Of a DNA stretch of 64,000 nucleotides, positions 663 to 52,850 are shown piece by piece. The notes beneath the pieces are model-generated. The model was given only the letters and a program-made list of their open reading frames with translations. It ran no database searches and was not told the origin of the DNA. The translations under genes were made by a program, and so were the position numbers. This stretch comes from Macrostomum lignano (taxonomy: Eukaryota), in contig NIVC01001883.1 in the NCBI GenBank assembly GCA_002269645.1, forward strand, positions 124,001-188,000. Direction: 5' to 3'. Numbering within the stretch: the stretch's first letter is position 1; every line of letters begins with the position of its first letter.

Positions 663-850
663 AATTTTCACGCATCAGAATTTCAAGTAAATTTGGTATT
701 TGCAGGTTGAGTTTCACTATTGGTACTCGTATAAGTTTTTCCCAACGTTTGTAGTCCAGTGATCCCGTGGATAAAATGCTCTTCATATCCGTCAACCTGT
801 TCAGTTTACTTAATCTGTTTATTCCCCACCGCCCGCCTTCGCCTCTTCAG

Positions 851-3617
851 GCTAAGGAGGCCGGCATTTCCACTCTCGTGATGCTTGACGACCAAGGCGG
901 TGAGGCTCGCTTCCGTGTTGTGCTCTGATAATGCTAGTGGCTTCTTTCCTGCTGTAGCAATTAATGTTGTGTGAGACTGATGTCTGCTTTTCTGCACTTT
1001 TAGTTTTTTATTGATTTTTACCTGTTCAACATGATTGGATGATTGGTCAGCTGGGATAATTGATCAGTTATGATAATTGGTCAGCTGGGAGATTTGGTCA
1101 GCTGGGAGAATTGGTCAGTTGGGATAATTGGTCAGCTGGGATAATTGGTCAGCTGGGATAATTGGTCAGTTGGGAGAATTGGTCAGCTGGGATAATTGAT
1201 CAGTTATGATAATTGGTCAGCTGGGAGATTTGGTCAGCTGGGAGAATTGGTCAGTTGGGATAATTGGTCAGCTGGGAGAATTGGTCAGTTGGGATAATTG
1301 GTCAGCTGGGATAATTGGTCAGCTGGGATAATTGGTCAGTTGGGATAATTGGTCAGCTGGGAGAATTGGTCAGTTGGGATAATTGGTCAGCTGGGATAAT
1401 TGGTCAGCTGGGATAATTGGTCAGCTGGGAGAATTGGTCAGTTGGGATAATTGGTCAGCTGGGATAATTGGTCAGTTGGGATAATTGGTCAGTTGGGATA
1501 ATTGGTCAGCTGGGATAATTGGTCAGCTGGGATAATTGGTCAGCTGGGAGAAATGGTCAGTTGAGATAATTGGTCAGCTGGGAGAAATGGTCAGCTGGGA
1601 TAATTGGTCAGTTGGGATAATTGGTCAGCTGGGAGAATTGGTCAGTTGGGATAATTGGTCAGCTGGGATAATTGGTCAGCTGGGATAATTGGTCAGCTGG
1701 GAGAATTGGTCAGCTGGGAGAAATGGTCAGCTGGGATAATTGGTCAGTTGGGATAATTGGTCAGCTGGGAGAATTGGTCAGTTGGGATAATTGGTCAGCT
1801 GGGATAATTGGTCAGCTGGGATAATTGGTCAGCTGGGAGAATTGGTCAGTTGGGATAATTGGTCAGCTGGGATAATTGGTCAGTTGGGATAATTGGTCAG
1901 TTGGGATAATTGGTCAGCTGGGATAATTGGTCAGCTGGGATAATTGGTCAGCTGGGATAATTGGTCAGTTGGGATAATTGGTCAGCTTGGAGAAATGGTC
2001 AGCTGCGAGAAATGGTCAGCTGGGAGATTTATTATTTAAAGTTTACACTCAGGCTTCTGCTAGGCGGATGTCCTTATCAGATGCTGTAGTCTGCAAGAAT
2101 GTCACCAGCCTTCGGGTTATTTTTGTATTCTTTGCATGCACAGACTTTCTGTATTGAATATTTGACCCCGTAGTCCATTAGGAGTGAGCAAAAATATGCG
2201 TATTGATGCCCCCGAGTGTGACCCAGTGTACACCGACCCAGCCTGGCACAACCCCGGTGCCCATTCGTCATCTCAGAGCAAATGGACCGCATCGAGGAGG
2301 GCATGGACCAGATCAACACGGACATGAAAGACGCCGAGAAGAATCTGGACGATCTGAACAAGTGCTGCGGCCTCTGCATCCTGCCGTGGAACAAGTGAGG
2401 GTCAATCGAGTTCGTTTGAAATTACTCGCGCACCAATAGTTAATTTCCTGTCGAACTTTTTTCCTGCCAGAGCCGGCAAAGGCCAGTTCGACAAAAACTT
2501 CAAGAAGGACGACGACGGCACTGTGAACACCGACGGGCCCCGGGTGGTTCTCGGCGACAACGGAATGGGACCTCAGGGTGGCTACGTCACCAGGTGAGAG
2601 CGGCAGTGTCCTCTCAGGGAGAGTACTACTGAGATTGGATAGAGTGTACACTGGGGGAGAGGGCCGAGATTGAATAGAGTGTACACTGGGGGACAGGGCC
2701 GATATTGGATAGAATGTACACTGGGGGAGAGGGCCGAGATTGCATAGAATGTACACTGGGGAGAGGGCCGAGATTGGATAGAATGTACACTGGGGGAGAA
2801 CGCCGAGATTGGATAGAATGTACACTGGGGGAGAGGGCCGAGATTGGATAGAGTGTACACTGGGGGAGAACGCCGAGATTGGATTGAATGTACACTGGGG
2901 AGAGGGCCGAGATTGAATAGAGTGTACACTGGGGAGAGGGCCGAGACTGGATACAATGTACACTAGGGAGAGGGCCGAGATTGGATAGAATGTACACTGG
3001 GGAGAGGGCCAAGTTTGGATACAATGTACACTGTGGGAGAGGGCCGATATTGGATAGAATGTACACTGGGGGAGAGGGCCGAGATTGGATAGAATGTACA
3101 CTGGGGGAGAACGCCGAGATTGGATAGAATGTACACTGGGGAGAGGGCCGAGATTGGATAGAATGTACACTGGGGAAGGAGTACTTGAACAATGTCCTAT
3201 TCAATTTCAGAATCACGAAGGACGACCGCGAGGACGAGATGGACAACAACATCCAGGAGGTCGGCAACATGGTTGGCAACCTGCGCAACATGGCCATCGA
3301 CATGGGCAGCGAGATCACTTCGCAGAACAGGCAGCTGGACCGCATCCAGGAGAAGGTGGGTTTGCTTGATCCTACCAGCAGCCGGGGCTCGTGCGCTGCA
3401 GTCGTACAGAGTTCAAAGCAAGCAGTTGAAGAAAAAAAACTTTTTAATAGCCGAACTTCACAGCTAGTTTTAGTTTCCTGGGGGTTTGCTCTTTGCCATC
3501 AGTGCGCATGTACTCCATAGCACAAGCGACGCTGCGCTCCCCGCCCACCCGCAGGCCGCGTCCAACCAGACGCGCATCGAGGGCGCCAACGAGCGGGCGA
3601 ACAAGATGCTGAAATGA
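851..3617 (+). CDS. SNAP25: SNAP-25 t-SNARE, 5'-partial; join(851..899,2277..2394,2471..2593,3211..3355,3555..3617)
   Basis: All introns GT-AG and phases join. Translation [56 protein letters not shown]...[68 protein letters not shown]. Both SNARE helices and the palmitoylated Cys cluster are present; exon sizes 49, 118 and 145 nt equal those of vertebrate SNAP25. The first coding exons lie outside the window. Confidence 0.96.
1041..2027. repeat. 17-bp minisatellite (AATTGGTCAGCTGGGAT)n, ~55 copies
   Basis: Directly visible; SNAP-25 intron. Confidence 0.95.
2625..3178. repeat. 35-36-bp minisatellite (GGGGGAGAGGGCCGAGATTGGATAGAATGTACACT)n
   Basis: Fills the SNAP-25 intron 2594-3210. Confidence 0.95.
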
Positions 3618-4179: not shown

Positions 4180-4185
4180 AATAAA
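4180..4185 (+). terminator. Candidate polyadenylation signal (AATAAA) of SNAP-25
   Basis: First canonical AATAAA downstream of the stop at 3617 (an ATTAAA variant occurs near 3783). Confidence 0.4.
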
Positions 4186-5325
4186 GACACGAGTTCGCGC
4201 CCGAGGCATAGATAAATATATATACATTTATCTATATTTATTTAAAACCAATCAAACATGGCTTGGCTTCTTTATTTCTGTTTGAACGATAGCGCCTAGG
4301 CCCGAGTGTTTCCAGTCCAAGTGCGTAGTATCACAATTAATATGCAAGGACTACTAGAAGGGCGCCGGTCGATTAGCTGGTGAATTCATTAATCTGCCGT
4401 GAAAATGACCTTCAATGTTACTCACAGTTTTTCAAAATTATACAAATAATCCCGCAAAATTTTTCCAAGCAGTCCCTGTAAATTTATCGGCAATTTGCTT
4501 AGGTTTCTACTGCCAGTAGAATACCTAGGCTATGTTTCGCTTTTTCAATAGCGGCAAAACTGCCGCTGTCCATGCGTCTCATCTCAAAAAGTGTTACACA
4601 GAGACAGCTGATTGGAGATAAACTGACAAGCTGGTATGAGATTGAGCCATATTTCCATTTTTTAGTTTATTGACTGCTTCGATTGGCTCCATCGGACTGC
4701 GGCAAGTGCAGATAAGGGCGACATATTTCATCCTGAACGTGGGTCGGCCAGTGCCACAGTGCAGCGTGTACTTTAATTAGAAATCCAGCCAGCAAAGGAA
4801 CTCTATGTCTACTTTGCTATACCTGATCCCCAGGGGAAGCAGAGACCGAGGAGCAAGTTTTTGCCTAGGGAGGGGAGCAAGAGCTTTTTTCTAAGCATCT
4901 GACCCCCCCTGCCCCCTGACCTCCCCTGAGTGGCTCCCGGATTGAATTCAAGCAATAATCTCACATTTCAGGGACAGGTGCCCCTCTGCCCCCCCCCCAT
5001 TCCGCAGTGCCTAACGCCACCGAGTCAGTGGTGCCAATACTTTGGCCATAGACATCTTCTCAGCGGGCGGGCTGCCTTCTTTCTTTATCCTTCTGAATGA
5101 GACTCAAACGATTTCGCTTAAATTGGAAACTAAATGAGAGAAGGTCTCTATGGCAACGAACCGCCAATGGAAACGGATCTGCCGTCTGTGGTCGTTCTGA
5201 GTTGAGCCATCAGCTGAGAGCAGGATTCCCAAAGCAAAGCAGATTAGCATAAGGATAGAATAGGCCTTATTAACCTTAGCTTGAACCTGCCTAGCAACTA
5301 AACGGCAAGTTTAAAAATCTCCCAG

Positions 5326-7407
5326 GCCCAGAGGCAGCAGCAGCAGCAGCCGGAGCCGCAGGGGCAACCGCCGCAGGTTTTCCACCCACCCGAGCAGCTG
5401 AGCCGCTGCGCGCACATCGGCTCGCTGACAGCCTACCGAGATGCCTACCTGCGCTCCATCACTGCGCCCGACGACTTCTGGCGCGAGGCTGCCGACTCGC
5501 TGCTCGACTGGCGCCACAGGCCGGACGACTGGCGCCAGGCACCGGTGACGCGTCAGAATCTCGACAAGCGGTGCGAGGGCGGCGTCGACTGCCGCTGGTT
5601 CGCCGGCTGGCGGCTCAACGCCTGCCACAACGCGCTGGACCGGCACGTTGCCGCCGGCCTCGGCGACCGCGTCTGCCTGCACTGGGAGGCCAACGAGCCC
5701 GACGGCGCCGGCCACGCCGTCACCTACGCGCAGATGCTCGCCCGAGTGCGCCGGCTGGCCCGCGCCCTGTCCGGCGCCGGCGTCCGGCGCGGCGACCGAG
5801 TCTGCGTCTACATGGCCAACGTGCCACAGCAGATGGAGGCGCTGCTCGCCTGCGCCCGCCTCGGCGCCGTTCACGTCGTCGTCTTCGCTGGCTACTCGGC
5901 CGAGTCGCTGGCCGAGCGGCTGCTGGACGCCGGAGCTCGAGTCCTGCTCACCTGCGACTTTGCCTGGCGCGGCCACCGGCGCCTCGGCCTCAAGCCCATC
6001 GCTGACGCCGCCATGCGCGCCTGCGCCGAGGCCGGCGCTGAAATCCGCGCCTGCTTCGTCCTGCGCCGCGCCGATGACCAGCCCTGCCCGATGGAGGCCG
6101 GCCGCGACCAGCCCTGGCCGGAGCCCCCATCGGAGGGCGACGAGGACTTTGACGAGGCCTCCGGGCCGCCGCCGGAGTGGCTGGACGCCGAGGAGCCGCT
6201 GTTCGCCCTGCACACCAGCGGCAGTACTGGAAAGCCGAAGGCGCTGCTGCACAGCACCGGCGGCTACCTGGTCTACGCCGCCTTCACCACCCGCCTGGCC
6301 TTTGACATGCGGCCGCCCACCGTGCACTGGTGCACCGCCGACCTGGGCTGGATCACCGGCCACTCCTACCTGGTCTACGGGCCCCTCCTGCTCGGCGCCA
6401 CCTGCGTCATGCTGGAGGGCCCGCCCTGCTGGCCGGAGCCCGGCCGCTGCTGGCGGGTGGTGGACCGCTACAAAGTCGAGTCGTTCTACACCGCGCCCAC
6501 GCTGCTGCGCGCCCTCATGCGGGCCGGCGACTCCCAGTTTGAGGGCAGCAGCCGCAGCTCCCTGCGCATCCTCGGCTCCGTTGGCGAGCCTATCAACCCG
6601 GAGGCCTGGCTGTGGCTGCACGCCAAGGTCGGCTCCGGCCGCTGCCCCGTGGTTGACACCTACTGGCAGACGGAGACCGGCGGTCACGTGATCGCCCCTC
6701 TGCCGGGCGCCACGCCGGCCAAGCCCGGCTCCGCCTGCCTGCCGCTGCCCGGCGTCCGGCCGGTGCTGCTTGACCCGGACACCGGCCGGGAGCTGGACGG
6801 GCCGGCCGAAGGCCACCTGGCGTTCGGGCCGCTGGCCTGGCCGGGCCTGGCCCGCAGCATCCTTGGCGACCACGAGCGCTTTGAGCGGACCTACTTCTCC
6901 GCATTCCCCGGCTACTACTGCTGCGGCGACGGCGCCAGGCGCGACGCCGACGGCTACCTGTGGATCACCGGCCGGGTCGACGACGCCATGAACGTCAGCG
7001 GCCACCTGATGAGCTCTGCGCAGCTCGAGGTCGCCCTTCTGCGCCACCCCGCTCTGGCCGAAGCCGCTGTGGTCGGCCGGCCCCACGACGTCAAAGGCGA
7101 GGCCGCCTGCGCCTTCCTCGTGCTGAAGGAGGACGACGGCTGCGGGCTGGACGAGCGGCTGCGGGCGAGCCTGCGCGGCCTGGTGCGCGAGGTTATCGGC
7201 CCGTTCGCCGTGCCGGACCACCTGCTGCGCGTGGCCGCCCTGCCGAAGACCCGCTCCGGCAAGGTGATGCGCCTCCTGGCCGCCGGCCGCGACCCCCGCT
7301 GCGTCGGCGACCTCAGCGCCCTGGCGGAGCCGCACTGCCTGGAGCAGCTGCGGGCGGCCGTGGAGGCGGAGTTCGGTCGGGTGGGGGAAATTCCCGCCGC
7401 GGACTGA
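5326..7407 (+). CDS. ACSS2: Acetyl-CoA synthetase (AMP-forming), ACSS2-like; single large exon, start codon must come from splicing
   Basis: Frame open from 5302 to TGA at 7407. Motifs: AHIGSLTAYRDAYLRSITAPDDFW (N-terminal domain), HTSGSTGKPK, DLGWITGHSY, SVGEPIN, DTYWQTETGG, GRVDDAMNVSGH, LPKTRSGK. Acceptor CCCAG ends at 5325 in phase 0; first in-frame ATG only at 5734. Confidence 0.93.
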   Translation, partial: AQRQQQQQPEPQGQPPQVFHPPEQLSRCAHIGSLTAYRDAYLRSITAPDDFWREAADSLLDWRHRPDDWRQAPVTRQNLDKRCEGGVDCRWFAGWRLNACHNALDRHVAAGLGDRVCLHWEANEPDGAGHAVTYAQMLARVRRLARALSGAGVRRGDRVCVYMANVPQQMEALLACARLGAVHVVVFAGYSAESLAERLLDAGARVLLTCDFAWRGHRRLGLKPIADAAMRACAEAGAEIRACFVLRRADDQPCPMEAGRDQPWPEPPSEGDEDFDEASGPPPEWLDAEEPLFALHTSGSTGKPKALLHSTGGYLVYAAFTTRLAFDMRPPTVHWCTADLGWITGHSYLVYGPLLLGATCVMLEGPPCWPEPGRCWRVVDRYKVESFYTAPTLLRALMRAGDSQFEGSSRSSLRILGSVGEPINPEAWLWLHAKVGSGRCPVVDTYWQTETGGHVIAPLPGATPAKPGSACLPLPGVRPVLLDPDTGRELDGPAEGHLAFGPLAWPGLARSILGDHERFERTYFSAFPGYYCCGDGARRDADGYLWITGRVDDAMNVSGHLMSSAQLEVALLRHPALAEAAVVGRPHDVKGEAACAFLVLKEDDGCGLDERLRASLRGLVREVIGPFAVPDHLLRVAALPKTRSGKVMRLLAAGRDPRCVGDLSALAEPHCLEQLRAAVEAEFGRVGEIPAAD

Positions 7408-8894
7408 ATTGAATGGTTGCTATTTTTAGACTCTGATTGGGTCTATTTTTAGACAGGGGATACTGAGGCCAATGTGGCTAGTCGGTCTTATACTCAAAAT
7501 GGTTGTCTTTAAAAGGAATTTTGATTATTATTTCATAATTTTACACATTTTTAATCAAAATCGTTAATCTGCTTTTAGTTAGCAAAGCAACTTTGTGCTT
7601 TGACACGTCCAAGTTTACTGCGACTTTTTGCTTTTGTTACACATCAACATTTTTATTGTGCTGTTTTTTATTACTTCAGAGTAGAATAGACTCGCGCTGA
7701 TTAAGTGTGGAATACTAATTCATCATATTTAGCATTTCTAGTTAATTTTTCATCCCCATAGCAACTAAGGATTTGCCTTGGACACAGCAGCTCAGATAGA
7801 CTATGAGCTGCCTGTCAGTCAATACGAACCTGTCCGCACATAATAAGCATAATAATAAGTATAAAACCAGTGGCTGTTTGCCCTTCTCTTTCTCTCTCAC
7901 ACGCGAAACTTTTTGACAGGTCAGAGGCAGCTGACTCGAAAACGGCCCAGCTTGTTGGCGCTGGCATCTGGCAGGGAGAACTCGAACCAGAGCCCCAGAG
8001 TATCCGGAGGGTTTCAATTTGCTTGCACAGCAGACAGGGGAGCTGACCGACCTTGTCTGCCAGAGCCCCCTGCGCAAACTGTTGGCAACTCGACATTCAG
8101 AACGCCAGACTCCCGAGAAGTTTCTCATAAATTCAATGAAAGATGCAAGATGAGGCACGAGCTCCCCTGCCTGCTGTGTGGCAGCTGAAGAACTATCAGG
8201 AACTGGGGTGCCAGTCAGTCCAAGTTCTCTTTTAAGTTGGCCTTGGCGCTGGGAGCCGCAGATCCCCCTGTCAGATACGGGGGGCCGCCGCCATCGCTGC
8301 CCAAGCCTGTCAAAATTTTCCCAACTAGGAATTTTTCCCCAAAGCTGTTTGCCTGACCAACAACTGTCCGAAACTGTGTGGTCATGTTGCTTTTGCAAAT
8401 CTTTTGTTGCAGAAATTGGCGCAGTTCTGGGCTGACATCTCTGGGCAGCAGCCAATATTTGGGTCTTTGTCGCAGCACTGTGCCAGCCGCATTTTGTGTT
8501 CTTCCCATGCTAAATTTCACACAGGTTGTATTAGCGGTAGCCAGCTAGCAGTGCACCAACTCTTTGTGCGTCTATTTTTTCATTTAGAATTTGCTTTCAG
8601 AGCACGCTTTCATACTACTGACGCCATCAGTAACCAGTATAGACTGCCGAGTTTTAGCAAGAATTTTGCTAGCATGTTTATTTTTATATATTTAATTTCT
8701 GCTCCAGCTGCAGTGCTGGGCGGCACGGACCTCCTGTTTACAAATACATGTTGTGCGCCGCGTAGCAATATCGATTTTAGTGGCATTTAATCTTCAGTCT
8801 GACTTCAGCAGTTCTCAAGTTCTTTTTTACTGTCGTTGAACATTGAAAAATGGATGAAAGTAATATAAATTTTTGGTGAAACTCTTTGTGACTT

Positions 8895-9722
8895 GACTCA
8901 GACTCAGACCCTGCTCTATTAGACTCAGACTCTACTCTATTAGACTCAGACCCTTTTTCAACTCAGACCCTGCTCTATTAGATTAAGACTCTATTAGACT
9001 CAGACTCTACTCTATTAGACTCAGACCCTACTCTATTAGACTCAGACTCAGACCCTGCTCTATTAGACTCAGACTCCATTCTATTAGACTCAGACTCTAC
9101 TCTATTAGACTCAGACCCTTTTTCAACTCAGACCCTGCTCTATTAGATTAAGACTCTATTAGACTCAGACTCCATTCTATTAGACTCAGACTCTACTCTA
9201 TTAGACTCAGACCCTTTTTCAACTCAGACCCTGCTCTATTAGATTAAGACTCTATTAGACTCAGATTCTACTCTATTAGACTCAGACTCTACTCTATTAG
9301 ACTCAGACCCTTTTTTCAACTCAGACCCTGCTCTATTAGATTAAGACTCTACTCTATTAGACTCAGACTCTACTCTATTAGACTCAGACCCTTTTTCAAC
9401 TCAGACCCTGCTCTATTCGACTCAGACTCTACACTATTAGACTCAGACCCTTTTTTCAACTCAGACCCTGCTCTATTAGATTAAGACTCTATTAGACTCA
9501 GATTCTACTCTATTAGACTCAGACTCTACTCTATTAGACTCAGACCCTTTTTTCAACTCAGACCCTGCTCTATTAGATTAAGACTCTATTAGACTCAGAT
9601 TCTACTCTATTAGACTCAGATTCTACTCTATTAGACTCAGACCCTGCCCAGAGACACTCAGACCCTGCCCAGAGACACTCAGACCCTGCCCAGAGACACT
9701 CAGACCCTGCCCAGACTCAGAC
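8895..9722. repeat. Compound minisatellite built on CTCTATTAGACTCAGA with higher-order units
   Basis: Directly visible. Confidence 0.92.
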
Positions 9723-10699: not shown

Positions 10700-11101
10700 A
10701 TGGCGCCAGTGTCCGAGCTGGACTGGGTGCTGATGGCGCCAGTGTCCGAGCTGGACTGGGTGCTGATGACGCCAGTGTCCGAGCTGGACTGGGTGCTGAT
10801 GGCGCCAGTGTCCGAGCTGGACTGGGTGCTGATGGCGCCAGTGTCCGAGCTGGACTGGGTGCTGATGGCGTCAGTGTCCGAGCTGGACTGGGTGCTGATG
10901 GCGCCAGTGTCCGAGCTGGACTGGGTGCTGATGGCGCCAGTGTCCGAGCTGAGTTTGGTGCCGATGGCGCCAGTGTCCGAGCTGGACTGGGTGCTGATGG
11001 CGCCAGTGTCCGAGCTGAGTTTGGTGCTGATGGCGCCAGTGTCCGAGCTGAGTTTGGTGCTGATGGCGCCAGTGTCCGAGCTGGACTGGGTGCTGATGGC
11101 G
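10700..11101. repeat. 33-bp minisatellite, 12 copies
   Basis: TGATGGCGCCAGTGTCCGAGCTGGACTGGGTGC. Confidence 0.95.
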
Positions 11102-11560
11102 CAGAAGAGATGGCAGAATAGATGGCCGAGTAGATGGCAGTGGAGATGGCAGAGGAGATGGCAGGGAGATGGCAGAGGAGATGGCAGAATAGATGGCAGA
11201 GGTGATAGCAGGGGAGGTGGCAGAGGAGATGGCAGAGGAGATGGCAGAATAGATGGCAGAGGTGATAGCAGGGGAGGTGGCAGAGGAGATGGCAGAGGTG
11301 ATAGCAGGAGAGGTGGCAGAGGAGATGGCAGAGGCGATGGCAGGGGAGATGGCAGGGAGATGGCAGAGGAGATGGCAGGGAGATGGCAGATGAGATAGCA
11401 GGGGAGGTGGCAGGAGAGATGGCAGAGGAGATGGCAGAATAGATGGCAGAATAGATGGCAGAGGTGATAGCAGGGGAGGTGGCAGAGGAGATGGCAGAGG
11501 AGATGGCAGAGGAGATGGCAGGGGAGATGGCAGAGTAGATGGCAGGGGAGATGGCAGGGG
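11102..11560. repeat. Purine-rich 12-bp-based repeat (GATGGCAGAGGA)n
   Basis: Directly visible; abuts the 33-bp array. Confidence 0.9.
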
Positions 11561-12628
11561 ATTCCGTGTTTCCCCTTGTCTCCCCGTGGCTCGGGGCCCC
11601 AGGCCGCAAGACAAGGCGCAGCTGCGGCAGTATTCAGGCAGGCCTCGCGCCAGCAGTCAAACGGACTGGCAGCCGAGGCTCGGCAGGAATCCCCCCTGCT
11701 GCGAAGCCGGCAACAACAGTTACGCAAGCCGGGCAGCCGTGTCACCAGAAACTGGGTCTGACAGCTCTGCCCGCCCGCGAGCCGCATCTGGGGATTTCGG
11801 GGATACTTGACAAGGGTCAGCCTGCCAGCATCCCCTGTGCACTTCTTAGTCAGCGGCCGCTGAAGTCGAATGCCGCTCGAAGCTCGGCTGCCGGAAAGAA
11901 AGCGGCTTAGGGAAATTTATCCCACAAAGGGAGCCTGGCTGGGTTGATGGCAGGCGGGGGCAAGGAGAGGAGGGGGTAGTCAGGCAGATATCGGAGGCGG
12001 TGGAGGCTGGCATTGTGGGAGAGTTTCCAGCAGACGGTGAAGCCGCGTATCCATCGCCATCTGTCAGCGGTGGGAAGTCGGCGAATCACTGAAGGCGGTG
12101 GTGGCTCAAGACGGCACACGAAGCTGCTGAAGCCGCCACCGCAGCCTAATGAGCAGTTATCCATCGCGGGGGATTAGCCCCCGCCCAACACAGCTCAGCA
12201 CTGGGCCGGGCCGAGTGGAACACGGAAAAATGATTATCGAAGCCAAAGGGGGAGGCTGGAAAGGGATGAAGGAGAGCTCTCAGATCCCCCGGCCCTCTAG
12301 CAGACTGTTGTTGGCGGGCCAGCAGCTGCGCCACTCTGCATTTTTGCCTTGATTTCTCAGCCCAGCCCAGCCGAGAGGTTCGCGGGACAAATTGGCGAAC
12401 TCGCGGCAAAGTTGGGGAGGCGAGAGGGAGACATTCGGGCCAAAGCCGGCCGAGAACCGCGCTGGATTCGCAGGCCGGCCGTCAGCCAATGGCGGCGCCG
12501 CCCCCTCCCCTGATTTCCATATGGGATCAGCGGCGCCAGGTGACTGATGAAGCTGGATCGGGAGCTGCAGTCCGACTGTGTGAAAGAGATAAGAATTCTT
12601 CAACCAACCCGCCAGCATCCAGCATCAA

Positions 12629-45446
<32,818 letters not shown>

Positions 45447-47534: not shown

Positions 47535-47826
47535 AGCCATAGCACACCCATAGCACAGCACTGGCAAATCCATTGCACAGCACTGGCAAATCCATTGCAC
47601 AGCACTGGCAAATCCATTGCACAGCACTAGCTCATCTATTGCACAGCACTAGCACACTCATAGCACAGCACTAGCACACACCCATAGCACAGCGCTAGCA
47701 CACCCATAGTACACCCATAGCACAGCGCTAGCACACACCCATAGCACACCCATAGCACAGCGCTAGCACACAGCCATAGCACAGCGCTAGCACACACCCA
47801 TAGCACAGCACTAGCACACACCCATA
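47535..47826. repeat. ~22-24-bp minisatellite (CCCATAGCACAGCACTAGCACA), left part
   Basis: Interrupted by the LTR element; resumes at 52679. Confidence 0.93.
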
Positions 47827-48034
47827 TGTTGTGTAATGATCGATGCTGGCTAGCCGACGTGCAGTCTTTCTCTTTCTCTCTCAGTGCACCTGCCCCCAGT
47901 CCCCCATTGACGCGTACAATGTACATTGCTCACTGCACTTGACTAAACAATAATATATATATCGGCTCTCTGCCCATCGCTGGCTTTAAGCGTTTCGTAG
48001 CTCGCACACACTCGCCTTGACTTCTAACATAACA
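47827..48034 (+). repeat. 5' LTR (208 bp)
   Basis: TGTTGTG...CATAACA; direct repeat of 52471-52678. Confidence 0.97.
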
Positions 48035-48046
48035 TGGCGTCGCAAG
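48035..48046 (+). promoter_or_regulatory. Primer binding site candidate TGGCGTCGCAAG
   Basis: TGG immediately after the 5' LTR (complement of tRNA CCA); cognate tRNA not verified. Confidence 0.7.
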
Positions 48047-48069
48047 TCTAAACTTTCTAGCAAGCAAGC

Positions 48070-48906
48070 ATGGATGGATTGAGGCCGCCAGAGCCCATGA
48101 TTTTTGACACCAATAGGGCAGACAACTGGAGGCGATGGATCAGTGCATTTGATTTCTACATGAAAGCTACGAAGAGGACTGAAGAAAGTGAAGAAGTGAA
48201 GATCGCTGTTCTCCTGACCGCGCTGGGATCCGATGGACAGGACGTATTCTCCACGTTTTCTGCAGACCAAGTAGCAACGTACGCAGCTGTAAAGAGTGCG
48301 TTCCAAGAGTACTGCGAGCCTTTGTCGAATGAGACCTTTGAGCGCTACCAGCTTCGAACAAGAGTGCAAGGAGAAGCTGAGGACTTCGACCAATTCGTTG
48401 GCTCACTTCGCCAGCTCATCAAGCGATGCAACTACAGCGAGCCAGCGAACAAGGAGACCATCGAGAACAGCGTCATTCGAGATCAGATCGTCATCGGTGC
48501 GAACGACCCAGCTCTGAGGGAGAGGCTTCTCCGCGAGACAAAGCTGACGCTGGACCGCGCCATCCAGATGGGTCGAGCGTCGGAGACTTCGAAGCGGCAG
48601 GCTTGGACCCTGGCCACAGCGCAGATCAGCCGAGCAACGCCTGCACCCGCGCCAGCGTCCGTCGAGGCAGTTCAAGGCGAACCAGCCGGTCGCAGCCCGC
48701 CAGCAATGCCAAGTCGGCTCGCAGTTGCGGCTTCTGCGGACAGCAGCATGAGCGGCGCAAGTGCCCGACATTCGGTAAGACCTGCAATAACTGTGGTCGT
48801 GCAAACCATTTCTCGTCCGTGTGCCGCTCAGCTAAGAAGGTCAACGAGCTGGTGGAGAACACCGAGACCGAGTCCGCGGGTGATGGCCCGGCTGCAGCAA
48901 TCATGA
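48070..48906 (+). CDS. gag: Retrotransposon Gag (capsid part; homology probably ends near 48675)
   Basis: NWRRW...F, ETFERYQLRTRVQGEAEDFDQFV, IRDQIVIG...LRERLL...LTLDRAI: typical Mag-type capsid. Confidence 0.88.
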   Translation: MDGLRPPEPMIFDTNRADNWRRWISAFDFYMKATKRTEESEEVKIAVLLTALGSDGQDVFSTFSADQVATYAAVKSAFQEYCEPLSNETFERYQLRTRVQGEAEDFDQFVGSLRQLIKRCNYSEPANKETIENSVIRDQIVIGANDPALRERLLRETKLTLDRAIQMGRASETSKRQAWTLATAQISRATPAPAPASVEAVQGEPAGRSPPAMPSRLAVAASADSSMSGASARHSVRPAITVVVQTISRPCAAQLRRSTSWWRTPRPSPRVMARLQQS

Positions 48907-51900
48907 CCGTGGAGCAGCCAGGTGCTCGAACCAAGGCGCAAACCGACAGCTCGGCGATGATGGTGTGCCTGACTGTCACGGACTCTGGAAGAAAGCTTCA
49001 GTTCAAGGTGGACACCGGTGCGGACGTCAACGTGATCCCTCTGAACCGGCTGATCCAGCTCGCCCCTGCAGCATCGATTGAGCCGACATCCTGGACTCTG
49101 ACAACGTACAACAAGCAGCTGCTGGACGTGGTCGGCATCACGTACTTGACTGTGTCTTCGCCCTGCCGGAAGAATGCCCGACTGCAGTTTGTTGTTGTCG
49201 GCGAGAACTCCACGCCTATCATCGGCTGGAAGTCAGCGATTGAGGAGCTGCAGCTGGTCAAGAAGCTGTTCTCGTTGCAGCAGAGTCCAAGCAGCATCAG
49301 CAAGGTGAGCAAGCAGCAGTTATCGGAACTGAACTCCAGCCAGTTAAAGGCCAGCTTCCCAGAAGTATTCAACGGCGTTGGTTGCATGAAGCAGCCATAC
49401 ACCATTCAACTGTCGGACAACGCAGTGCCTAAGGTGCAGCCTCCTCGCAAGGTGCCATTTGCTGCGTATCAACCTCTGAAGTGCGAGCTGGAGAGACTCG
49501 AGAAGGAAGGAACGATAGCGCGAGTCGACGAACCGACGCAGTGGGTCTCCAATGTGGCCATCGTGTGGAAGAAGGACGGCTCGATGCGACTGTGTCTAGA
49601 TCCGACCTACCTGAACAGGTTCATCATCAGAGAGTACCACCCGATCCCCACCGCCGAGGAAGTTCGAGCTGCGACTGCTGGAGCCATCCTGTACAGCTCA
49701 TTCGATGCGAACGAGAGCTTTCACCAACTAAAACTCGATGATGAAAGCTCCTTCCTGACCACGTTCCACACCCCGTTCGGCCGATATCGCTGGAAACGAG
49801 TTCCATACGGTCTCTCATCCATTCCCGAGGTCTTCCAGAAGAGAATGGAAGAAAACGTCACAAACAACGTGAGAAACTCTAAGAACTTCTTTGACGACAT
49901 CATCGTGTGGGGAAGAACAGTCGAGGAGCACGACCAAGCTGTGCGAGAGCTCCTGGAGCAGTGCAAGCGTGCCAAGGTGACACTGAACCCACAGAAGATG
50001 CGAGCCGGTGTCCAAGAGCTCAACTACCTAGGCGATGTGCTCAGCTCGGAAGGGTTGCGAGCAGATCCAATGAAGGTCAAAGCCATCAAAGAAATGATCC
50101 GGCCGAATGATGTTGAAGGTCTCACTTCGAAGAAGGAGCAGCTAAGGCGATTTCTCGGCTGTGTGACGTACCTGGCCAAGTTTTGTCCTCATCTTTCCGC
50201 TACTGCAGAGCCGCTTAGACACCTGCTCAAGAAAGACGTCATTTGGAGCTGGACGCATCAGCACGACGAGGCGTACGACTCAATCATCACGGAGCTGTGT
50301 TCTAACAGGGTTTTGGCCACATTTGACGTCAGCAAGCCAGTCACCGTGTCTGTGGATGCCTGCAAGAGCGGCATCGGTGCTGTGCTACTCCAAGAGGACC
50401 GTCCGGTTGAGTTCGCTTCATCAGCCATGACTAAAGCTCAGCAGGCATACGCGCAGATTGAGAAGGAGCTCCTGGCTATTGTGTACGGCTGCAAGAAATT
50501 TCACCGCTACCTCTGGGGCCGCACTGTCAATGTCCAGAGTGACCATAAGCCACTGGAGTCCATCTTAAAGAAGCAGCTCTGTGACACCACGCCGCGCATC
50601 CAGCGCTTGCTGCTGCAGCTGCAGCCCTACGACATTCGTGTGAAGTACACACCAGGAAAGGAGCTGTACGTCGCAGACACGCTAAGCCGAGCTCACGGAA
50701 AGACGGACAGCCTGACGCTTCTGCTGGAGGAAGCTTTGGACGGACAAGTGCTAGCTGTGGAGCGATGCTTCAGTGAAGACCGCGAGATTCTGACAATGAT
50801 CAAGAAGGCCACGGCTGCAGACCAGACGAGCCAGCGTCTGCAGGAGGTCATTCAAGCCGGATGGCCCGAGCATCGAAACCGACTACCTGACGATTTGAGA
50901 GTATTTTGGGATCTTCGCCATGATCTGACTTTCGTCTCAGGACTCCTGTGCCTGAAGGACCGCATCTACGTGCCAGCCGGCAGCGCCAGAAGCTCGATCC
51001 TAAGAATTTTGCACGCTGGACACCCTGGAATCGTCAAGATGGACCTGAAAGCCAAAGATTATTTTTACTGGCCAGGAATGCGCACCTGCATCGAGCGAAC
51101 TGTCAGCCAGTGCGAGGCCTGCCAGCGTAACATGAAGGCCCAGTCAAAAGAGACTTTGATGACCGTTGAAATGCCCGAGTTTCCGTTCCAAGTCTGCTCG
51201 ACCGACTTGTTCGAGTTCCGGGGCGCTGCGCACCTGGTGTACGTAGACGCCTACAGCCACTGGATGAGCATCACCCGCCTGCGGTCGACAACAAGCCTGG
51301 CAGTAGTTCAGGTGCTCCAAGATCATTTCCAGAACTTTGGAGTGCCAGAGAAGCTCATCAGTGACAACGGGCCGCAGTTCACCGCAGGAGAGTTCCGCCA
51401 GTTCATGACCAGATTTCAAGTGGAGCACCGGACATCGAGTCCGGCCTACCCGCAGTCCAACGGCAAAGCAGAGCGATATGTGCAGACTGCCAAGAATATG
51501 ATGAAGAAGTGCCAGGAGACTGGACAGAGCCTGGCACTGGCCCTTTTGCACTATCGCAACACGCCGGTCGGCAGCGGCTTCCCCAGCCCGGCGGAAATGG
51601 CGTTTGGCCGGAAACTGCGGTGCGACCTGCCGACAACGGTGCAAGATCTGCGGCCTCGGGAGACCTACGTGCATGCCAGCATCGAAGCATTCCAGAAGGA
51701 GCGGACCCGGGCAGCTCAGCTCTACAACCGCGGTGCGCGCGCACTTCGATGCTTGGAGGTCGGCGAGCCGATCTGGCTTCAGTGCGATCGTCGGAACTGG
51801 GTGGCTGCCGAGGTCGACAGCGAGTTGGACGGCAGCCCGCGGTCGTACTGGCTTCGCACGGAGTCGGGCCAGCTGCTCAGGCGCAACCGGCGGTTTATCA

Positions 51901-52163
51901 GGCCACGTGAGATCGGCGTGCCATTCCATGAAAGCTACCCAGTGGCAGTGGCTGATGAGGATGTCAATCTGTCGGAGGCGGACGACCAGCAGGCACCCGT
52001 GCAACCGGCCGTGCAACCCGCGACAGAGCAGCCTGCAGAGCCAGTGCAGCCAGCTGAGCAGCCGGCATCTGTGCAACCGTGCTCAAGCTCGGACGACTCT
52101 GGGTTCCGGACCAAGCGAGGTCGGCTTGTCCATCAGCCGCAGAGGTACCAGGCCTCGTGGTGA
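48426..52163 (+). CDS. pol: Retrotransposon NC-Pol frame (effective from ~48676): zinc knuckles, protease, RT, RNase H, integrase
   Basis: CGFCGQQHERRKC and CNNCGRANHFSSVC; VDTGAD; LCLDP, FFDD; VSVDAC, EKELLA, DHKPL; HAGHPG...CEAC, DLF, SDNGPQF, GKAER. No internal stop. Confidence 0.95.
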   Translation: MQLQRASEQGDHREQRHSRSDRHRCERPSSEGEASPRDKADAGPRHPDGSSVGDFEAAGLDPGHSADQPSNACTRASVRRGSSRRTSRSQPASNAKSARSCGFCGQQHERRKCPTFGKTCNNCGRANHFSSVCRSAKKVNELVENTETESAGDGPAAAIMTVEQPGARTKAQTDSSAMMVCLTVTDSGRKLQFKVDTGADVNVIPLNRLIQLAPAASIEPTSWTLTTYNKQLLDVVGITYLTVSSPCRKNARLQFVVVGENSTPIIGWKSAIEELQLVKKLFSLQQSPSSISKVSKQQLSELNSSQLKASFPEVFNGVGCMKQPYTIQLSDNAVPKVQPPRKVPFAAYQPLKCELERLEKEGTIARVDEPTQWVSNVAIVWKKDGSMRLCLDPTYLNRFIIREYHPIPTAEEVRAATAGAILYSSFDANESFHQLKLDDESSFLTTFHTPFGRYRWKRVPYGLSSIPEVFQKRMEENVTNNVRNSKNFFDDIIVWGRTVEEHDQAVRELLEQCKRAKVTLNPQKMRAGVQELNYLGDVLSSEGLRADPMKVKAIKEMIRPNDVEGLTSKKEQLRRFLGCVTYLAKFCPHLSATAEPLRHLLKKDVIWSWTHQHDEAYDSIITELCSNRVLATFDVSKPVTVSVDACKSGIGAVLLQEDRPVEFASSAMTKAQQAYAQIEKELLAIVYGCKKFHRYLWGRTVNVQSDHKPLESILKKQLCDTTPRIQRLLLQLQPYDIRVKYTPGKELYVADTLSRAHGKTDSLTLLLEEALDGQVLAVERCFSEDREILTMIKKATAADQTSQRLQEVIQAGWPEHRNRLPDDLRVFWDLRHDLTFVSGLLCLKDRIYVPAGSARSSILRILHAGHPGIVKMDLKAKDYFYWPGMRTCIERTVSQCEACQRNMKAQSKETLMTVEMPEFPFQVCSTDLFEFRGAAHLVYVDAYSHWMSITRLRSTTSLAVVQVLQDHFQNFGVPEKLISDNGPQFTAGEFRQFMTRFQVEHRTSSPAYPQSNGKAERYVQTAKNMMKKCQETGQSLALALLHYRNTPVGSGFPSPAEMAFGRKLRCDLPTTVQDLRPRETYVHASIEAFQKERTRAAQLYNRGARALRCLEVGEPIWLQCDRRNWVAAEVDSELDGSPRSYWLRTESGQLLRRNRRFIRPREIGVPFHESYPVAVADEDVNLSEADDQQAPVQPAVQPATEQPAEPVQPAEQPASVQPCSSSDDSGFRTKRGRLVHQPQRYQASW

Positions 52164-52470
52164 ACTTTTGAGTGAAAACTGACTGTTGACTGAATTTAAA
52201 GGAACTGAAAGCTCTTTTTAAGTTTCTATAATTTTGGTGAAAGGAGGTATAGCAGAAGTTGATGTGTTGCCTTTGCTGCTCAAGCGTGCGATTTAAAAAG
52301 CGGTCTAAAATGATATTTTTCAACATTAATATTGTATTGTTCCATATGATCGTAAAATATTTCAATGTTTTTATTTTTCCCCATTCAACTGTTTTCGTGC
52401 GACTCTATTCGTGCTACTATCTTCGTTCTACTATTTTCGTGCCATTATATTCGTACTTTTCAATGTAAGG

Positions 52471-52678
52471 TGTTGTGTAATGATCGATGCTGGCTAGCCG
52501 ACGTGCAGTCTTTCTCTTTCTCTCTCAGTGCACCTGCCCCCAGTCCCCCATTGACGCGTACAATGTACATTGCTCACTGCACTTGACTAAACAATAATAT
52601 ATATATCGGCTCTCTGCCCATCGCTGGCTTTAAGCGTTTCGTAGCTCGCACACACTCGCCTTGACTTCTAACGTAACA
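52471..52678 (+). repeat. 3' LTR (208 bp)
   Basis: TGTTGTG...CGTAACA; one A/G difference from the 5' LTR, 6 bp from the end. Confidence 0.97.
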
Positions 52679-52850
52679 CCATAGTATAGCACTAGCACAG
52701 ACTCATAGCACAGCACTAGCACACACCCATAGCACAGCACTAGCACACCCATAGCACAGCGCTAGCACACAGCCATAGCACAGCGCTAGCACACACCCAT
52801 AGCACAGCACTAGCACACCCATAGTACACTCAGCACAGCACTAGCACACC
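52679..52850. repeat. Same minisatellite, right part
   Basis: Identical unit continues after the 3' LTR. Confidence 0.93.

What the first reader, a model, noticed from the sequence alone, without database searches (positions are those of the whole stretch)
5290..5740. ACS has no start codon for its conserved N-terminus: candidate spliced-leader-donated AUG
Seen: the frame is closed by TAA at 5299-5301. The conserved N-terminal domain follows (5400-5500), but the first in-frame ATG is at 5734. An acceptor (CCCAG|GCC, 5325) with a CTAAAC branch-like motif ~25 nt upstream opens exactly in phase 0, and no strong upstream ATG+donor exon is evident. Established: flatworm spliced leaders end in a conserved AUG, which in schistosomes can serve as the initiator Met. 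Inference: SL trans-splicing gives M-AQRQQQQQPEP..., 694 aa. This depends on the host being a flatworm.
Basis: partly seen in the sequence, partly recalled or inferred. Interest (0 to 1): 0.7.

Follow-up and report, generated by a model that had tools for sequence, protein, structure and literature searches.

The report
Flatworm acetyl-CoA synthetase copy lacking a start codon
A second, intron-free, very GC-rich acetyl-CoA synthetase gene in the flatworm Macrostomum lignano has no start codon of its own; borrowing the AUG at the end of the worm's spliced leader is the most economical fix, a mechanism already known in flatworms, but no transcript evidence was available to show it.

Summary
The acetyl-CoA synthetase (ACS) reading frame is open from 5302 to 7404. 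It is closed by TAA at 5299-5301, and its first in-frame ATG is at 5734, which lies inside the AMP-binding domain.

The window is Macrostomum lignano (Mlig_3_7 contig NIVC01001883.1, bases 124001-188000). This worm's 35-nt spliced leader (SL) ends in ATG, and 30-39% of its genes are trans-spliced.

The gene is a divergent second ACS copy, 55% identical to the worm's canonical 7-exon ACS. It has no introns, GC3 of 0.92, and no matching protein in the public collection searched.

G+C content jumps at 5319-5325, exactly at the proposed acceptor, and falls again at the stop codon. The cis-spliced alternatives I could build all have poor splice signals.

Three cautions apply:
- Being "in phase" proves little, because 13 of the 16 AGs nearby are in phase 0 owing to CAG and GAG codons.
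- One cis candidate (ATG 5097, donor 5184) cannot be excluded.
- The missing annotation, and changes at 17 otherwise invariant residues, leave a silent relic possible.

SL-donated AUG is the best reading at about 0.4. It would be a new member of a known kind (Cheng et al. 2006), not a new mechanism.

The parts
5299..5301 (+). In-frame TAA that closes the ACS frame upstream
5298..5303 (+). CTAAAC, a possible branch-point motif about 23 nt before the AG at 5324-5325. The intervening AG at 5308-5309 is only about 7 nt downstream of it and is in phase 2.
   Evidence: (inference only)
5320..5325 (+). Candidate (trans-)splice acceptor TCCCAG|G in phase 0. It has one mismatch to the M. lignano trans-splice motif YTNCAG and a matrix score of 4.3.
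   Evidence: PMC8629364
5326..5331 (+). Second acceptor of a NAGNAG pair (gcccag|AGG), also in phase 0, matrix score 6.6. It would give M-RQQQQQ...
5326..7407 (+). Intron-free ACS coding block: 693 codons plus TGA. GC is 0.73 and GC3 is 0.92. The G+C change-points fall at 5319-5325 and 7403-7407.
5335..5349 (+). (CAG)5 run coding for poly-Q. Every repeat is another phase-0 AG.
5383..5397 (+). Strongest acceptor-like site inside the ORF (cacccacccgagcag|CTG, score 9.7, phase 0). It would give M-LSRCAHIGSL...
5434..5634 (+). ACAS_N domain (PF16177)
5644..6819 (+). AMP-binding domain (PF00501)
5734..5736 (+). First in-frame ATG, inside the AMP-binding domain; not a plausible start for a functional enzyme
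7024..7263 (+). AMP-binding_C domain (PF13193). It keeps the catalytic Lys motif PKTRSGK but has a 2-residue deletion just after it.
5097..5183 (+). Rival: the only phase-0 ATG-to-GTNNG cis-exon candidate in the 1.65-kb intergenic region. It encodes MRLKRFRLNWKLNERRSLWQRTANGNGSA (net charge +7). GC3 is 10/28 (by eye).
5184..5325 (+). Rival: putative 142-nt intron with donor gcc|GTCTGT. The donor scores -0.3, against 3.0-11.2 for 11 true M. lignano donors.
4808..5096 (+). 289-nt stretch with no ATG, directly upstream of ATG 5097 (P about 0.02-0.045)
4983..5007 (+). Best acceptor-like site of the region: a C-rich polypyrimidine tract plus CAG, score 11.6. Its role is unknown; an SL AUG joined here would read a 31-codon upstream ORF.

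Best explanation
The locus is a second, ACSS2-type acetyl-CoA synthetase gene of Macrostomum lignano. It is an old, intron-free (retrogene-like), strongly GC-shifted paralogue of the canonical 7-exon ACS.

Its coding block begins directly at a 3' splice acceptor and has no genomic initiator. The most economical way to express it is as follows. The pre-mRNA is SL trans-spliced at the AG at 5324-5325, or at the neighbouring phase-0 AG at 5330-5331. The AUG that ends the 35-nt M. lignano spliced leader then becomes the initiator. The product would be M-AQRQQQQQPEP... (694 aa) or M-RQQQQQ....

Shown:
- the frame anatomy;
- the organism and its SL;
- the domain content;
- the composition boundaries;
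- the weakness of the cis alternatives.

Inferred:
- that the locus is transcribed;
- that it is trans-spliced at this site;
- that the SL AUG is used.
For: Organism: the 688-aa ORF at 61767-63833 is identical to a gene on GCA_002269645.1 contig NIVC01001883.1. The window sequence equals that record.

Spliced leader: the M. lignano SL ends in ATG. 30-39% of genes are trans-spliced, and trans-spliced genes are enriched for conserved genes. The acceptor motif is YTNCAG. Authors of the Macrostomum genome papers treat the final ATG as a start codon. Use of the SL AUG as initiator is established in flatworms; more than 40 S. mansoni cDNAs need it.

Frame: there is no in-frame ATG from 5302 to 5733, and a TAA at 5299. 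ATG 5734 would delete ACAS_N.

N-terminus: homologues place the initiator Met a short stretch (by eye, about 4-21 residues) before the (V/I)(F/Y)xPP motif. The window has 16 residues between the acceptor and QVFHPP.

Composition: the G+C change-points fall at 5319-5325 and at the stop codon 7403-7407, so the GC-rich block equals the coding block. By eye, in-frame GC3 is 21/24 for 5326-5397 but 4/8 for 5302-5325. Native high GC3 is also seen in the neighbouring SNAP-25 exons, at 0.92-0.94.

Cis alternatives: no ATG exon with a credible donor exists between the upstream gene's stop (3617) and 5325. The candidate donors at 5184, 5188 and 5191 score -0.3, -6.6 and 0.2, against 3.0-11.2 for true donors.

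Constraint: the ORF aligns end to end with ACS structures without a frameshift. By eye I count at least 8 indels against the canonical paralogue in the alignment, all in frame.
Against: There is no transcript evidence of any kind.

No protein identical to this ORF, whether started at 5302, 5326 or 5734 or present as a fragment, is in the 15-billion-protein collection. That collection does hold proteins of this assembly, and 5'-partial CDSs from it are on record. This suggests low or no expression.

Phase-0 agreement is expected by chance here.

The acceptor at 5325 has a weak pyrimidine tract and only a middling score.

The distance to the upstream gene's AATAAA (4180) is about 1.1 kb, longer than the main operon spacing in this species.

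No AATAAA or ATTAAA lies within 1.5 kb after the stop.

17 of 164 universally invariant ACS positions are changed, against 0-5 in other ACS sequences.
Confidence: 0.4

Rival explanations
1. An ordinary cis-spliced first coding exon supplies the ATG. The only candidate in the intergenic region is ATG 5097-5183, encoding MRLKRFRLNWKLNERRSLWQRTANGNGSA. This is a basic peptide that might act as a mitochondrial presequence. It would be joined across a 142-nt intron (5184-5325) to the same acceptor, giving a 722-aa protein. An exon further upstream is a less likely variant.
For: Tiny or short first coding exons do occur in this genome. The PITP gene starts with ATGCTGATCAAAGAGTA|GTAAGT at 58692 on the minus strand, followed by a 2-kb intron (confirmed by the NCBI gene range).

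The candidate peptide has net charge +7 in 29 residues, which about 3% of random ORF segments reach.

The 289 nt upstream of ATG 5097 contain no ATG, with P about 0.02-0.045.

One true M. lignano donor is cag|GTCTGC, similar to GTCTGT.

Sharing of acceptors between cis- and trans-splicing is reported in parasitic flatworms.
Against: The donor gcc|GTCTGT scores -0.3, while all 11 true donors score 3.0-11.2. C at positions -1 and -2 is seen in 0 of 11 true donors.

The exon's GC3 is 10/28 (by eye), with mostly A-ending codons. That is non-coding-like, against 0.60-0.94 for M. lignano coding exons.

One such candidate is no more than chance gives: shuffles average 1.3 in the proximal 440 nt and 4.5 in the whole spacer.

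The better donor at 5144 (score 4.2) is in phase 2 and can reach only the non-CAG acceptors at 5309 and 5333.

Both supporting statistics were noticed after the fact.
Confidence: 0.22
2. The copy is a silent or decaying retro-paralogue. It would be a processed copy that lost, or never had, its 5' end and start codon. It still looks intact because very GC-rich sequence rarely creates stop codons.
For: It has no introns, while the canonical gene has 6.

It has no start codon.

No matching protein, identical or fragmentary, was found in the collection that holds the NCBI and UniProt M. lignano proteins.

It has no canonical poly(A) signal nearby.

17 of 164 universally invariant residues are changed, including P-loop G306A, Y296H and a 2-residue deletion in the A10 region.

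The antisense strand also carries a 702-codon ORF, which shows how easily ORFs persist at this composition.
Against: There are 693 codons without a stop or frameshift, and an end-to-end alignment to ACS structures.

By eye I count at least 8 indels against the canonical paralogue, all in frame. That has about a 1.5e-4 chance if they were neutral.

146 of 164 invariant positions are kept, including the catalytic Lys motif.

GC3 of 0.92 stops precisely at the stop codon, as expected for a translated gene.

No poly(A) tract follows the 3' end, so there is no fresh retrocopy signature.

A recent death cannot be excluded.
Confidence: 0.25
3. Translation starts at a non-AUG codon on an unspliced mRNA (ACG 5302, AUC 5317 or CUG 5398), or the deposited sequence differs from the living allele by one base. 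For example, ACG 5302 is one transition away from ATG.
For: Near-cognate codons are present in frame. ACG 5302 directly follows the TAA and would give MASLKISQAQRQ... after a single C-to-T change.
Against: ACG 5302 has T at -3, a poor context.

Codons 5302-5325 have GC3 of 4/8 (by eye), unlike the rest of the gene at 0.92, and they lie outside the composition boundary.

An unspliced leader would carry upstream ATGs at 5097, 5134, 5150 and 5167.

The paper describing the Mlig_3_7 assembly reports improved base accuracy over the earlier ML2 assembly.
Confidence: 0.05
4. The GC-rich block is bacterial DNA, either a horizontal transfer or an assembly contaminant, rather than a worm gene.
For: GC is 0.73 against about 0.45-0.55 in the flanks. 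There are no introns. Identity to planctomycete ACS (51-53%) is close to that with animal ACS (48-55%). A neighbour-joining tree places it as a long branch outside animals.
Against: The best hit by about 90 bits is the canonical M. lignano ACS.

Among the 120 homologues aligned, only the window sequence and the M. lignano ACS carry the longest, 'AP'-containing form of the PDxxxxAP insertion.

It has the animal-type SGHL.S motif in place of the bacterial and algal SGHR.GT, and it shares GSAC with M. lignano.

The GC-rich block coincides exactly with the CDS, with worm genes on both sides in one contig.

Its GC3 equals that of native SNAP-25 exons.
Confidence: 0.02

Closest known systems
Flatworm mRNAs that use the 3'-terminal AUG of the spliced leader as initiator Met (Cheng, Cohen, Ndegwa & Davis 2006, J Biol Chem 281:733; Schistosoma mansoni)
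   Same: The host is a flatworm whose SL ends in AUG. The ORF opens directly at a 3' splice acceptor in phase. There is no own AUG for the conserved N-terminus, and an in-frame stop lies just upstream in the genome.
   Different: Here the junction is only predicted from genomic sequence; no cDNA or read shows it. The species is the free-living M. lignano, for which use of the SL AUG is assumed by annotators (PMC10468722) but, as far as I could find, not catalogued gene by gene.
Canonical M. lignano acetyl-CoA synthetase (BOX15_Mlig020094g1 / Mlig030207g1; PAA94743.1, PAA88910.1; UniProt A0A1I8JEN4)
   Same: The domain architecture is the same (ACAS_N, AMP-binding, AMP-binding_C). Both carry the animal-type SGHL motif, the shared PDxxxxAP insertion, PEWLDAE and GSAC. 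It is the best database hit (819 bits).
   Different: The canonical gene has 7 coding exons over 8.7 kb, its own ATG (L002 6049) and GC3 of 0.60-0.80. The window copy has no introns and no ATG. Its GC3 is 0.92, it is only 55% identical, and it is changed at 17 universally invariant sites.
slORFs: ORFs created by SL addition in nematodes, Oikopleura and trypanosomes (slORFfinder, PMC9851317)
   Same: The start codon is supplied in trans by the leader.
   Different: Those cases mostly use near-cognate NUG codons within the SL and were called from ribosome footprints. No such data were used here.
Processed retrogenes that recruit new 5' ends
   Same: All 6 parental introns have been lost, and the copy lies 1.7 kb downstream of an unrelated same-strand gene (SNAP-25-like).
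   Different: No poly(A) remnant or target-site duplication is visible. The copy is old (45% protein divergence), so its origin by retroposition is inferred, not shown.

Membership tests
AMP-forming acetyl-CoA synthetase (ANL superfamily, ACSS2 type) | ACAS_N + AMP-binding + AMP-binding_C domain architecture above the Pfam cut-offs | tested here: met
   45.0, 271.4 and 84.8 bits against cut-offs of 27, 29.9 and 24.5
AMP-forming acetyl-CoA synthetase (ANL superfamily, ACSS2 type) | Full-length collinear similarity to experimentally solved ACS enzymes | tested here: met
   8sf3 E = 7.7e-196 over query 25-685; Salmonella Acs E about 1e-186 over 43-684; no frameshift
AMP-forming acetyl-CoA synthetase (ANL superfamily, ACSS2 type) | Core motifs: P-loop TSGSTGKPKG, YWQTETGG, GDGARRD, GRxDD, and the catalytic Lys in PKTRSGK | tested here: inconclusive
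   all motifs are present and the Lys is kept. However, the P-loop reads HTSGSTGKPKA (Y296H, G306A), and the segment after the Lys has lost 2 residues (GKVMR--LLAAG). In total 17 of 164 invariant columns are changed.
AMP-forming acetyl-CoA synthetase (ANL superfamily, ACSS2 type) | Acetate:CoA ligase activity | not testable with these tools
   needs an enzyme assay
Flatworm mRNA initiated at the spliced-leader AUG | The host has an SL RNA whose exon ends in AUG | tested here: met
   The window is M. lignano contig NIVC01001883.1. The SL sequence ends in ...TTGCATG (PMC8629364; PMC5173321).
Flatworm mRNA initiated at the spliced-leader AUG | A 3' acceptor AG in phase with the ORF, with no stop between the junction and the conserved protein | tested here: met
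   (AG at 5324-5325, also 5330-5331). This is weak evidence, since 13 of 16 nearby AGs are in phase 0.
Flatworm mRNA initiated at the spliced-leader AUG | No genomic in-frame AUG able to give the conserved N-terminus | tested here: met
Flatworm mRNA initiated at the spliced-leader AUG | No upstream cis donor or ATG exon using the same acceptor (the upstream segment is an outron, not an intron) | tested here: inconclusive
   one candidate (5097-5183) with a very weak donor; others need weak acceptors
Flatworm mRNA initiated at the spliced-leader AUG | cDNA or reads with the SL joined to the acceptor; translation from the SL AUG | not testable with these tools
   No read data were available. No matching protein or contig was found in the collections.
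Processed retrogene or pseudogene | Lacks the introns of a multi-exon parent | tested here: met
   the canonical ACS has 6 introns; the window ORF is continuous across the corresponding positions
Processed retrogene or pseudogene | Poly(A) remnant at the 3' end | tested here: not met
   no A-tract after 7407
Processed retrogene or pseudogene | Flanking target-site duplications | not tested
   No search for flanking direct repeats was run around 5320 and 7407.
Processed retrogene or pseudogene | Disabling stops or frameshifts (for the pseudogene label) | tested here: not met

The most novel reading that the evidence does not exclude
An ancient, promoter-less and ATG-less retrocopy of ACS has been kept translatable only because SL trans-splicing gives it both a cap and an initiator AUG. 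On this reading, a leader ending in AUG would be a general way for flatworms to rescue 5'-truncated retrocopies. Because GC3-rich coding sequence puts almost every internal AG (from CAG, GAG and AAG codons) in phase 0, nearly any trans-splice event into such a copy would be in frame.
Probability: 0.12. Interest if true: 0.55.

Novelty: new member of a known kind. Interest (0 to 1): 0.3.

Why it matters
If confirmed, this would be a clear M. lignano example of a conserved enzyme whose start codon is not in its gene. That would explain why the copy has no matching protein in the collection searched, which includes NCBI and UniProt M. lignano proteins. It would also argue that gene finders for flatworms should accept 'AG|ORF' starts.

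It also flags a second, strongly diverged ACS paralogue in a model flatworm. The mechanism itself has been known since 2006, so the gain is in annotation and evolutionary detail, not a new principle.

Tried and rejected
- SL RNA gene in the window: no match to the 35-nt SL with up to 3 mismatches. No Rfam family reached its gathering score.
- Transcript evidence through protein collections: full-length and N-terminal searches found nothing above 55% identity. Exact look-ups of three possible products were negative. An exact 30-mer scan of metagenome contigs found nothing.
- The canonical ACS also has no Logan-derived members, so the absence of Logan hits says nothing about expression.
- Supplementary tables of M. 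lignano papers: the searches timed out or no useful files were held.
- Homeologous copies of the region exist, but ACS lies 54 kb from the only usable anchor gene, beyond the 10-kb flank.
- Bacterial origin or contamination: rejected on animal-specific motifs, an insertion shared with M. lignano, and worm genes on both flanks.
- Fresh retrocopy carrying an SL at its 5' end: the sequence upstream of 5326 has no similarity to the SL, and no poly(A) tract follows the gene.
- Strong-donor cis exons: sites 4321, 4739 and 5024 have good donor scores but no ATG-bearing ORF (ATG list; the check for 5024 was by eye). Site 4380 (ATG 4342) is in phase 2 and reaches only aag|T or gag|G acceptors.
Full report
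**1.

In the ACS frame there is a TAA at 5299-5301. The frame is then open through 7404, with TGA at 7405-7407. The first in-frame ATG is at 5734, the first GTG at 5545 and the first CTG at 5398.

Pfam finds ACAS_N at ORF residues 45-111, AMP-binding at 115-506 and AMP-binding_C at 575-654, numbering from 5302. Solved ACS structures align collinearly from residue 25-43 to the end. A start at 5734 (residue 145) would therefore remove the whole ACAS_N domain and the beginning of the adenylation domain.

**2. The organism**

The best hit of the ACS is the Macrostomum lignano ACS, at 819 bits against about 730 for the next group. The best named hit of the window's Ty3/gypsy pol is also M. lignano.

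The 688-aa ORF at 61767-63833 settles it. It is 100% identical to a protein in the representative library. Its gene lies on GCA_002269645.1 (Mlig_3_7), contig NIVC01001883.1, and a 700-aa cluster mate is named as M. lignano. The fetched record is identical to the window over the first 12 kb compared. This places the window at bases 124001-188000 of that contig and the ACS block at record 129,326-131,407.

M. lignano has a single 35-nt SL, CGGTCTCTTACTGCGAAGACTCAATTTATTGCATG. Between 30% and 39% of its genes are trans-spliced, with enrichment for conserved genes, and the acceptor motif is YTNCAG (PMC8629364; PMC5730564). The authors of the M. cliftonense and M. hystrix genomes state that the final ATG of the SL is likely a translation start (PMC10468722). 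Use of the flatworm SL AUG as initiator was shown by Cheng et al. 2006. The SL AUG is in frame in 28% of S. mansoni trans-spliced transcripts, and more than 40 cDNAs need it (as cited in PMC9851317, and PMC12582326).

**3. What the gene is**

It is not the worm's canonical ACS. That gene (L002; PAA94743.1 and PAA88910.1) has 7 coding exons over 8.7 kb, its own ATG and GC3 of 0.60-0.80.

The window copy has no introns, and M. lignano introns fall at positions that are continuous here. It is 55% identical to the canonical protein and has GC 0.73 and GC3 0.92. It is of animal ACSS2 type:
- It has SGHL.S where bacteria and an alga have SGHR.GT.
- It shares the PDxxxxAP insertion with the M. lignano ACS; only these two of the 120 aligned homologues carry the longest, 'AP'-containing form.
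- It also shares PEWLDAE and GSAC.

A bacterial origin is therefore rejected, despite a long-branch position in a crude neighbour-joining tree.

The copy is unusually diverged. It differs at 17 of 164 columns that are invariant in 17 ACS sequences from bacteria to vertebrates, where every other sequence differs at 0-5. The changes include Y296H and G306A in the P-loop and a 2-residue deletion after the catalytic Lys. Yet the frame has no stop or frameshift. By eye I count at least 8 indels against the canonical paralogue in the alignment, all in frame. So it was under coding constraint for most of its history.

**4. Neighbours**

On the same strand, 1.7 kb upstream, a SNAP-25-like gene ends. 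Its exons are at 2282-2394, about 2565-2593, about 3211-3355 and 3555-3617 (stop TGA at 3615-3617), with AATAAA at 4180. The ACS acceptor lies about 1.1 kb beyond that signal. That is longer than the roughly 100-bp mode for M. lignano operons and close to the 1-kb threshold those authors used.

**5. Evidence that coding starts at the acceptor**

A two-segment G+C change-point analysis puts the 5' boundary at 5319-5325 and the 3' boundary at 7403-7407, which is the stop codon. The GC-rich block is therefore the translated block, not the transcript. By eye, in-frame GC3 is 21/24 in 5326-5397, a non-conserved Q/P-rich stretch, and 4/8 in 5302-5325.

Homologues place their initiator Met a short stretch (by eye, about 4-21 residues) before the (V/I)(F/Y)xPP motif. 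The window has 16 residues between the acceptor and QVFHPP.

**6.

- Of the 16 AGs between 5293 and 5402, 13 are in phase 0 because they end CAG or GAG codons. 'Exactly in phase' carries no weight.
- The true junction could be 5325, 5331, any of the CAG repeats, or 5397.
Leave-one-out scores for the 8 true sites range from -0.9 to 7.3.
- The best acceptor-like site in the area is at 5007 (score 11.6), 318 nt upstream. An SL AUG joined there would read only a 31-codon upstream ORF.

**7. Cis-spliced alternatives**

The window itself shows why these must be taken seriously. The PITP gene on the minus strand starts with a 17-nt coding micro-exon (ATG at 58692, TA|GTAAGT) and a 2-kb intron. I found this from homology, and the NCBI gene range confirms it.

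M. lignano donors are also loose. Three of the six canonical ACS donors are GTGTGC, GTCTGC and GTGTGT. With the relaxed rule ATG...|GTNNG in phase 0, exactly one candidate exists between 3618 and 5265: ATG 5097-5183 with gcc|GTCTGT, giving a 142-nt intron. Shuffles give 4.5 such candidates on average.

In favour of this candidate:
- Its peptide, MRLKRFRLNWKLNERRSLWQRTANGNGSA, has net charge +7 (P about 0.03). It could be a mitochondrial presequence.
- The 289 nt upstream contain no ATG (P about 0.02-0.045).

Against it:
- The donor scores -0.3, against 3.0-11.2 for 11 true donors.
- GC3 is 10/28 (by eye), with A-ending codons.

A better donor at 5144 (score 4.2) is in phase 2 and reaches only aag|T or gag|G acceptors, whereas all 8 true acceptors seen are CAG.

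**8. Expression**

This is the main gap. No protein identical to this ORF, whole or in part, is in the collection. That collection contains the NCBI and UniProt M. lignano proteins, and 5'-partial CDSs from this assembly are on record (PAA94743.1; the L003 16925 gene). The Mlig_3_7 annotation is transcript-based, so the simplest reading is low or no expression in the libraries used.

No AATAAA or ATTAAA lies within 1.5 kb of the stop. This keeps a 'silent relic' reading alive, although the in-frame indels and the sharp coding-limited GC3 argue against a long-dead gene.

**9. Verdict**

If the gene is expressed, an SL-donated AUG at 5325 or 5331 is the most economical way to translate it, and the cis models need poor splice signals. 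My estimates are:

| Reading | Probability |
|---|---|
| SL-donated AUG | about 0.4 |
| Cis-spliced first exon | about 0.22 |
| Silent relic | about 0.25 |
| Non-AUG start or base error | about 0.05 |
| Bacterial DNA | about 0.02 |

The mechanism is known, so this would be a new member of a known kind. The practical result is an unannotated, diverged ACS paralogue and a concrete read-mapping test that would settle its 5' end.

Noticed in passing
window 840-3617 (+): The 3' part of a SNAP-25-like gene. It includes exons encoding ...[52 protein letters not shown], ...[45 protein letters not shown] and [20 protein letters not shown]. Its introns are filled with 16-, 17- and 35-nt tandem arrays. 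The first exons probably lie before the start of the window.
   Followed up: partly
window 54224-58692 (-): Phosphatidylinositol transfer protein gene. Its first coding exon is only 17 nt (ATGCTGATCAAAGAGTA|GTAAGT), followed by a 2-kb AT-rich intron and a phase-2 acceptor at 56681. It served as an internal control for hidden first exons and matches the NCBI gene range.
   Followed up: yes
window about 47600-52850 (+): Ty3/gypsy-type LTR retrotransposon with open gag-like (48070-48906) and pol (48426-52163; RT, RNase H, integrase) frames. Its terminal repeats share a 208-nt stretch at 100% identity, so it looks recently inserted. The pol product found no identical protein in the collection; the best match was 64%, from an ENA metagenome contig.
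   Followed up: partly
window 5314-7419 (-): A 702-codon ORF antisense to the ACS gene. I take it to be a by-product of GC3 0.92 on the sense strand, not a gene. It is a warning that ORF length means little at this composition.
   Followed up: partly
window 4983-5007 and 4808-5096 (+): A C-rich polypyrimidine tract ending in CAG, the best acceptor-like site of the region (score 11.6). It lies within a 289-nt stretch that has no ATG. No explanation so far; it could be a real trans- or cis-splice acceptor of an unannotated 5' exon.
   Followed up: partly
window 12593-13588, 34493-34885, 39941-40450 (Pfam LamG/EGF matches); 42216-44304 (no Pfam match) (+): Scattered GC3-rich exons with laminin-G and EGF domains; the first starts with a signal-peptide-like [14 protein letters not shown]. 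They suggest one large multi-exon gene with introns of 20 kb or more full of repeats. The ORFs at 42216-44304 had no Pfam hit and are included on composition and by-eye resemblance only.
   Followed up: no
window 61767-63833 (+): Single-exon gene weakly similar to HPS1 (BLOC-3) and Fuz longin domains. It has 90%-cluster mates on two other M. lignano contigs, consistent with the known hidden polyploidy of the sequenced line.
   Followed up: partly
whole window: Very dense short-period tandem repeats (periods 10-35 nt). Examples are 10-662, 1037-2025, 2631-3176, 8900-9715, 10700-11561 and 53729-54327. They create many spurious long ORFs in several frames.
   Followed up: no
L002 5988-6050 (M. 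lignano canonical ACS): The NCBI CDS of the canonical ACS is annotated as 5'-partial, starting 16 codons upstream of its ATG. A CAG acceptor lies 13 nt further upstream, out of frame with the ORF. So the canonical gene does not need the SL AUG.
   Followed up: partly
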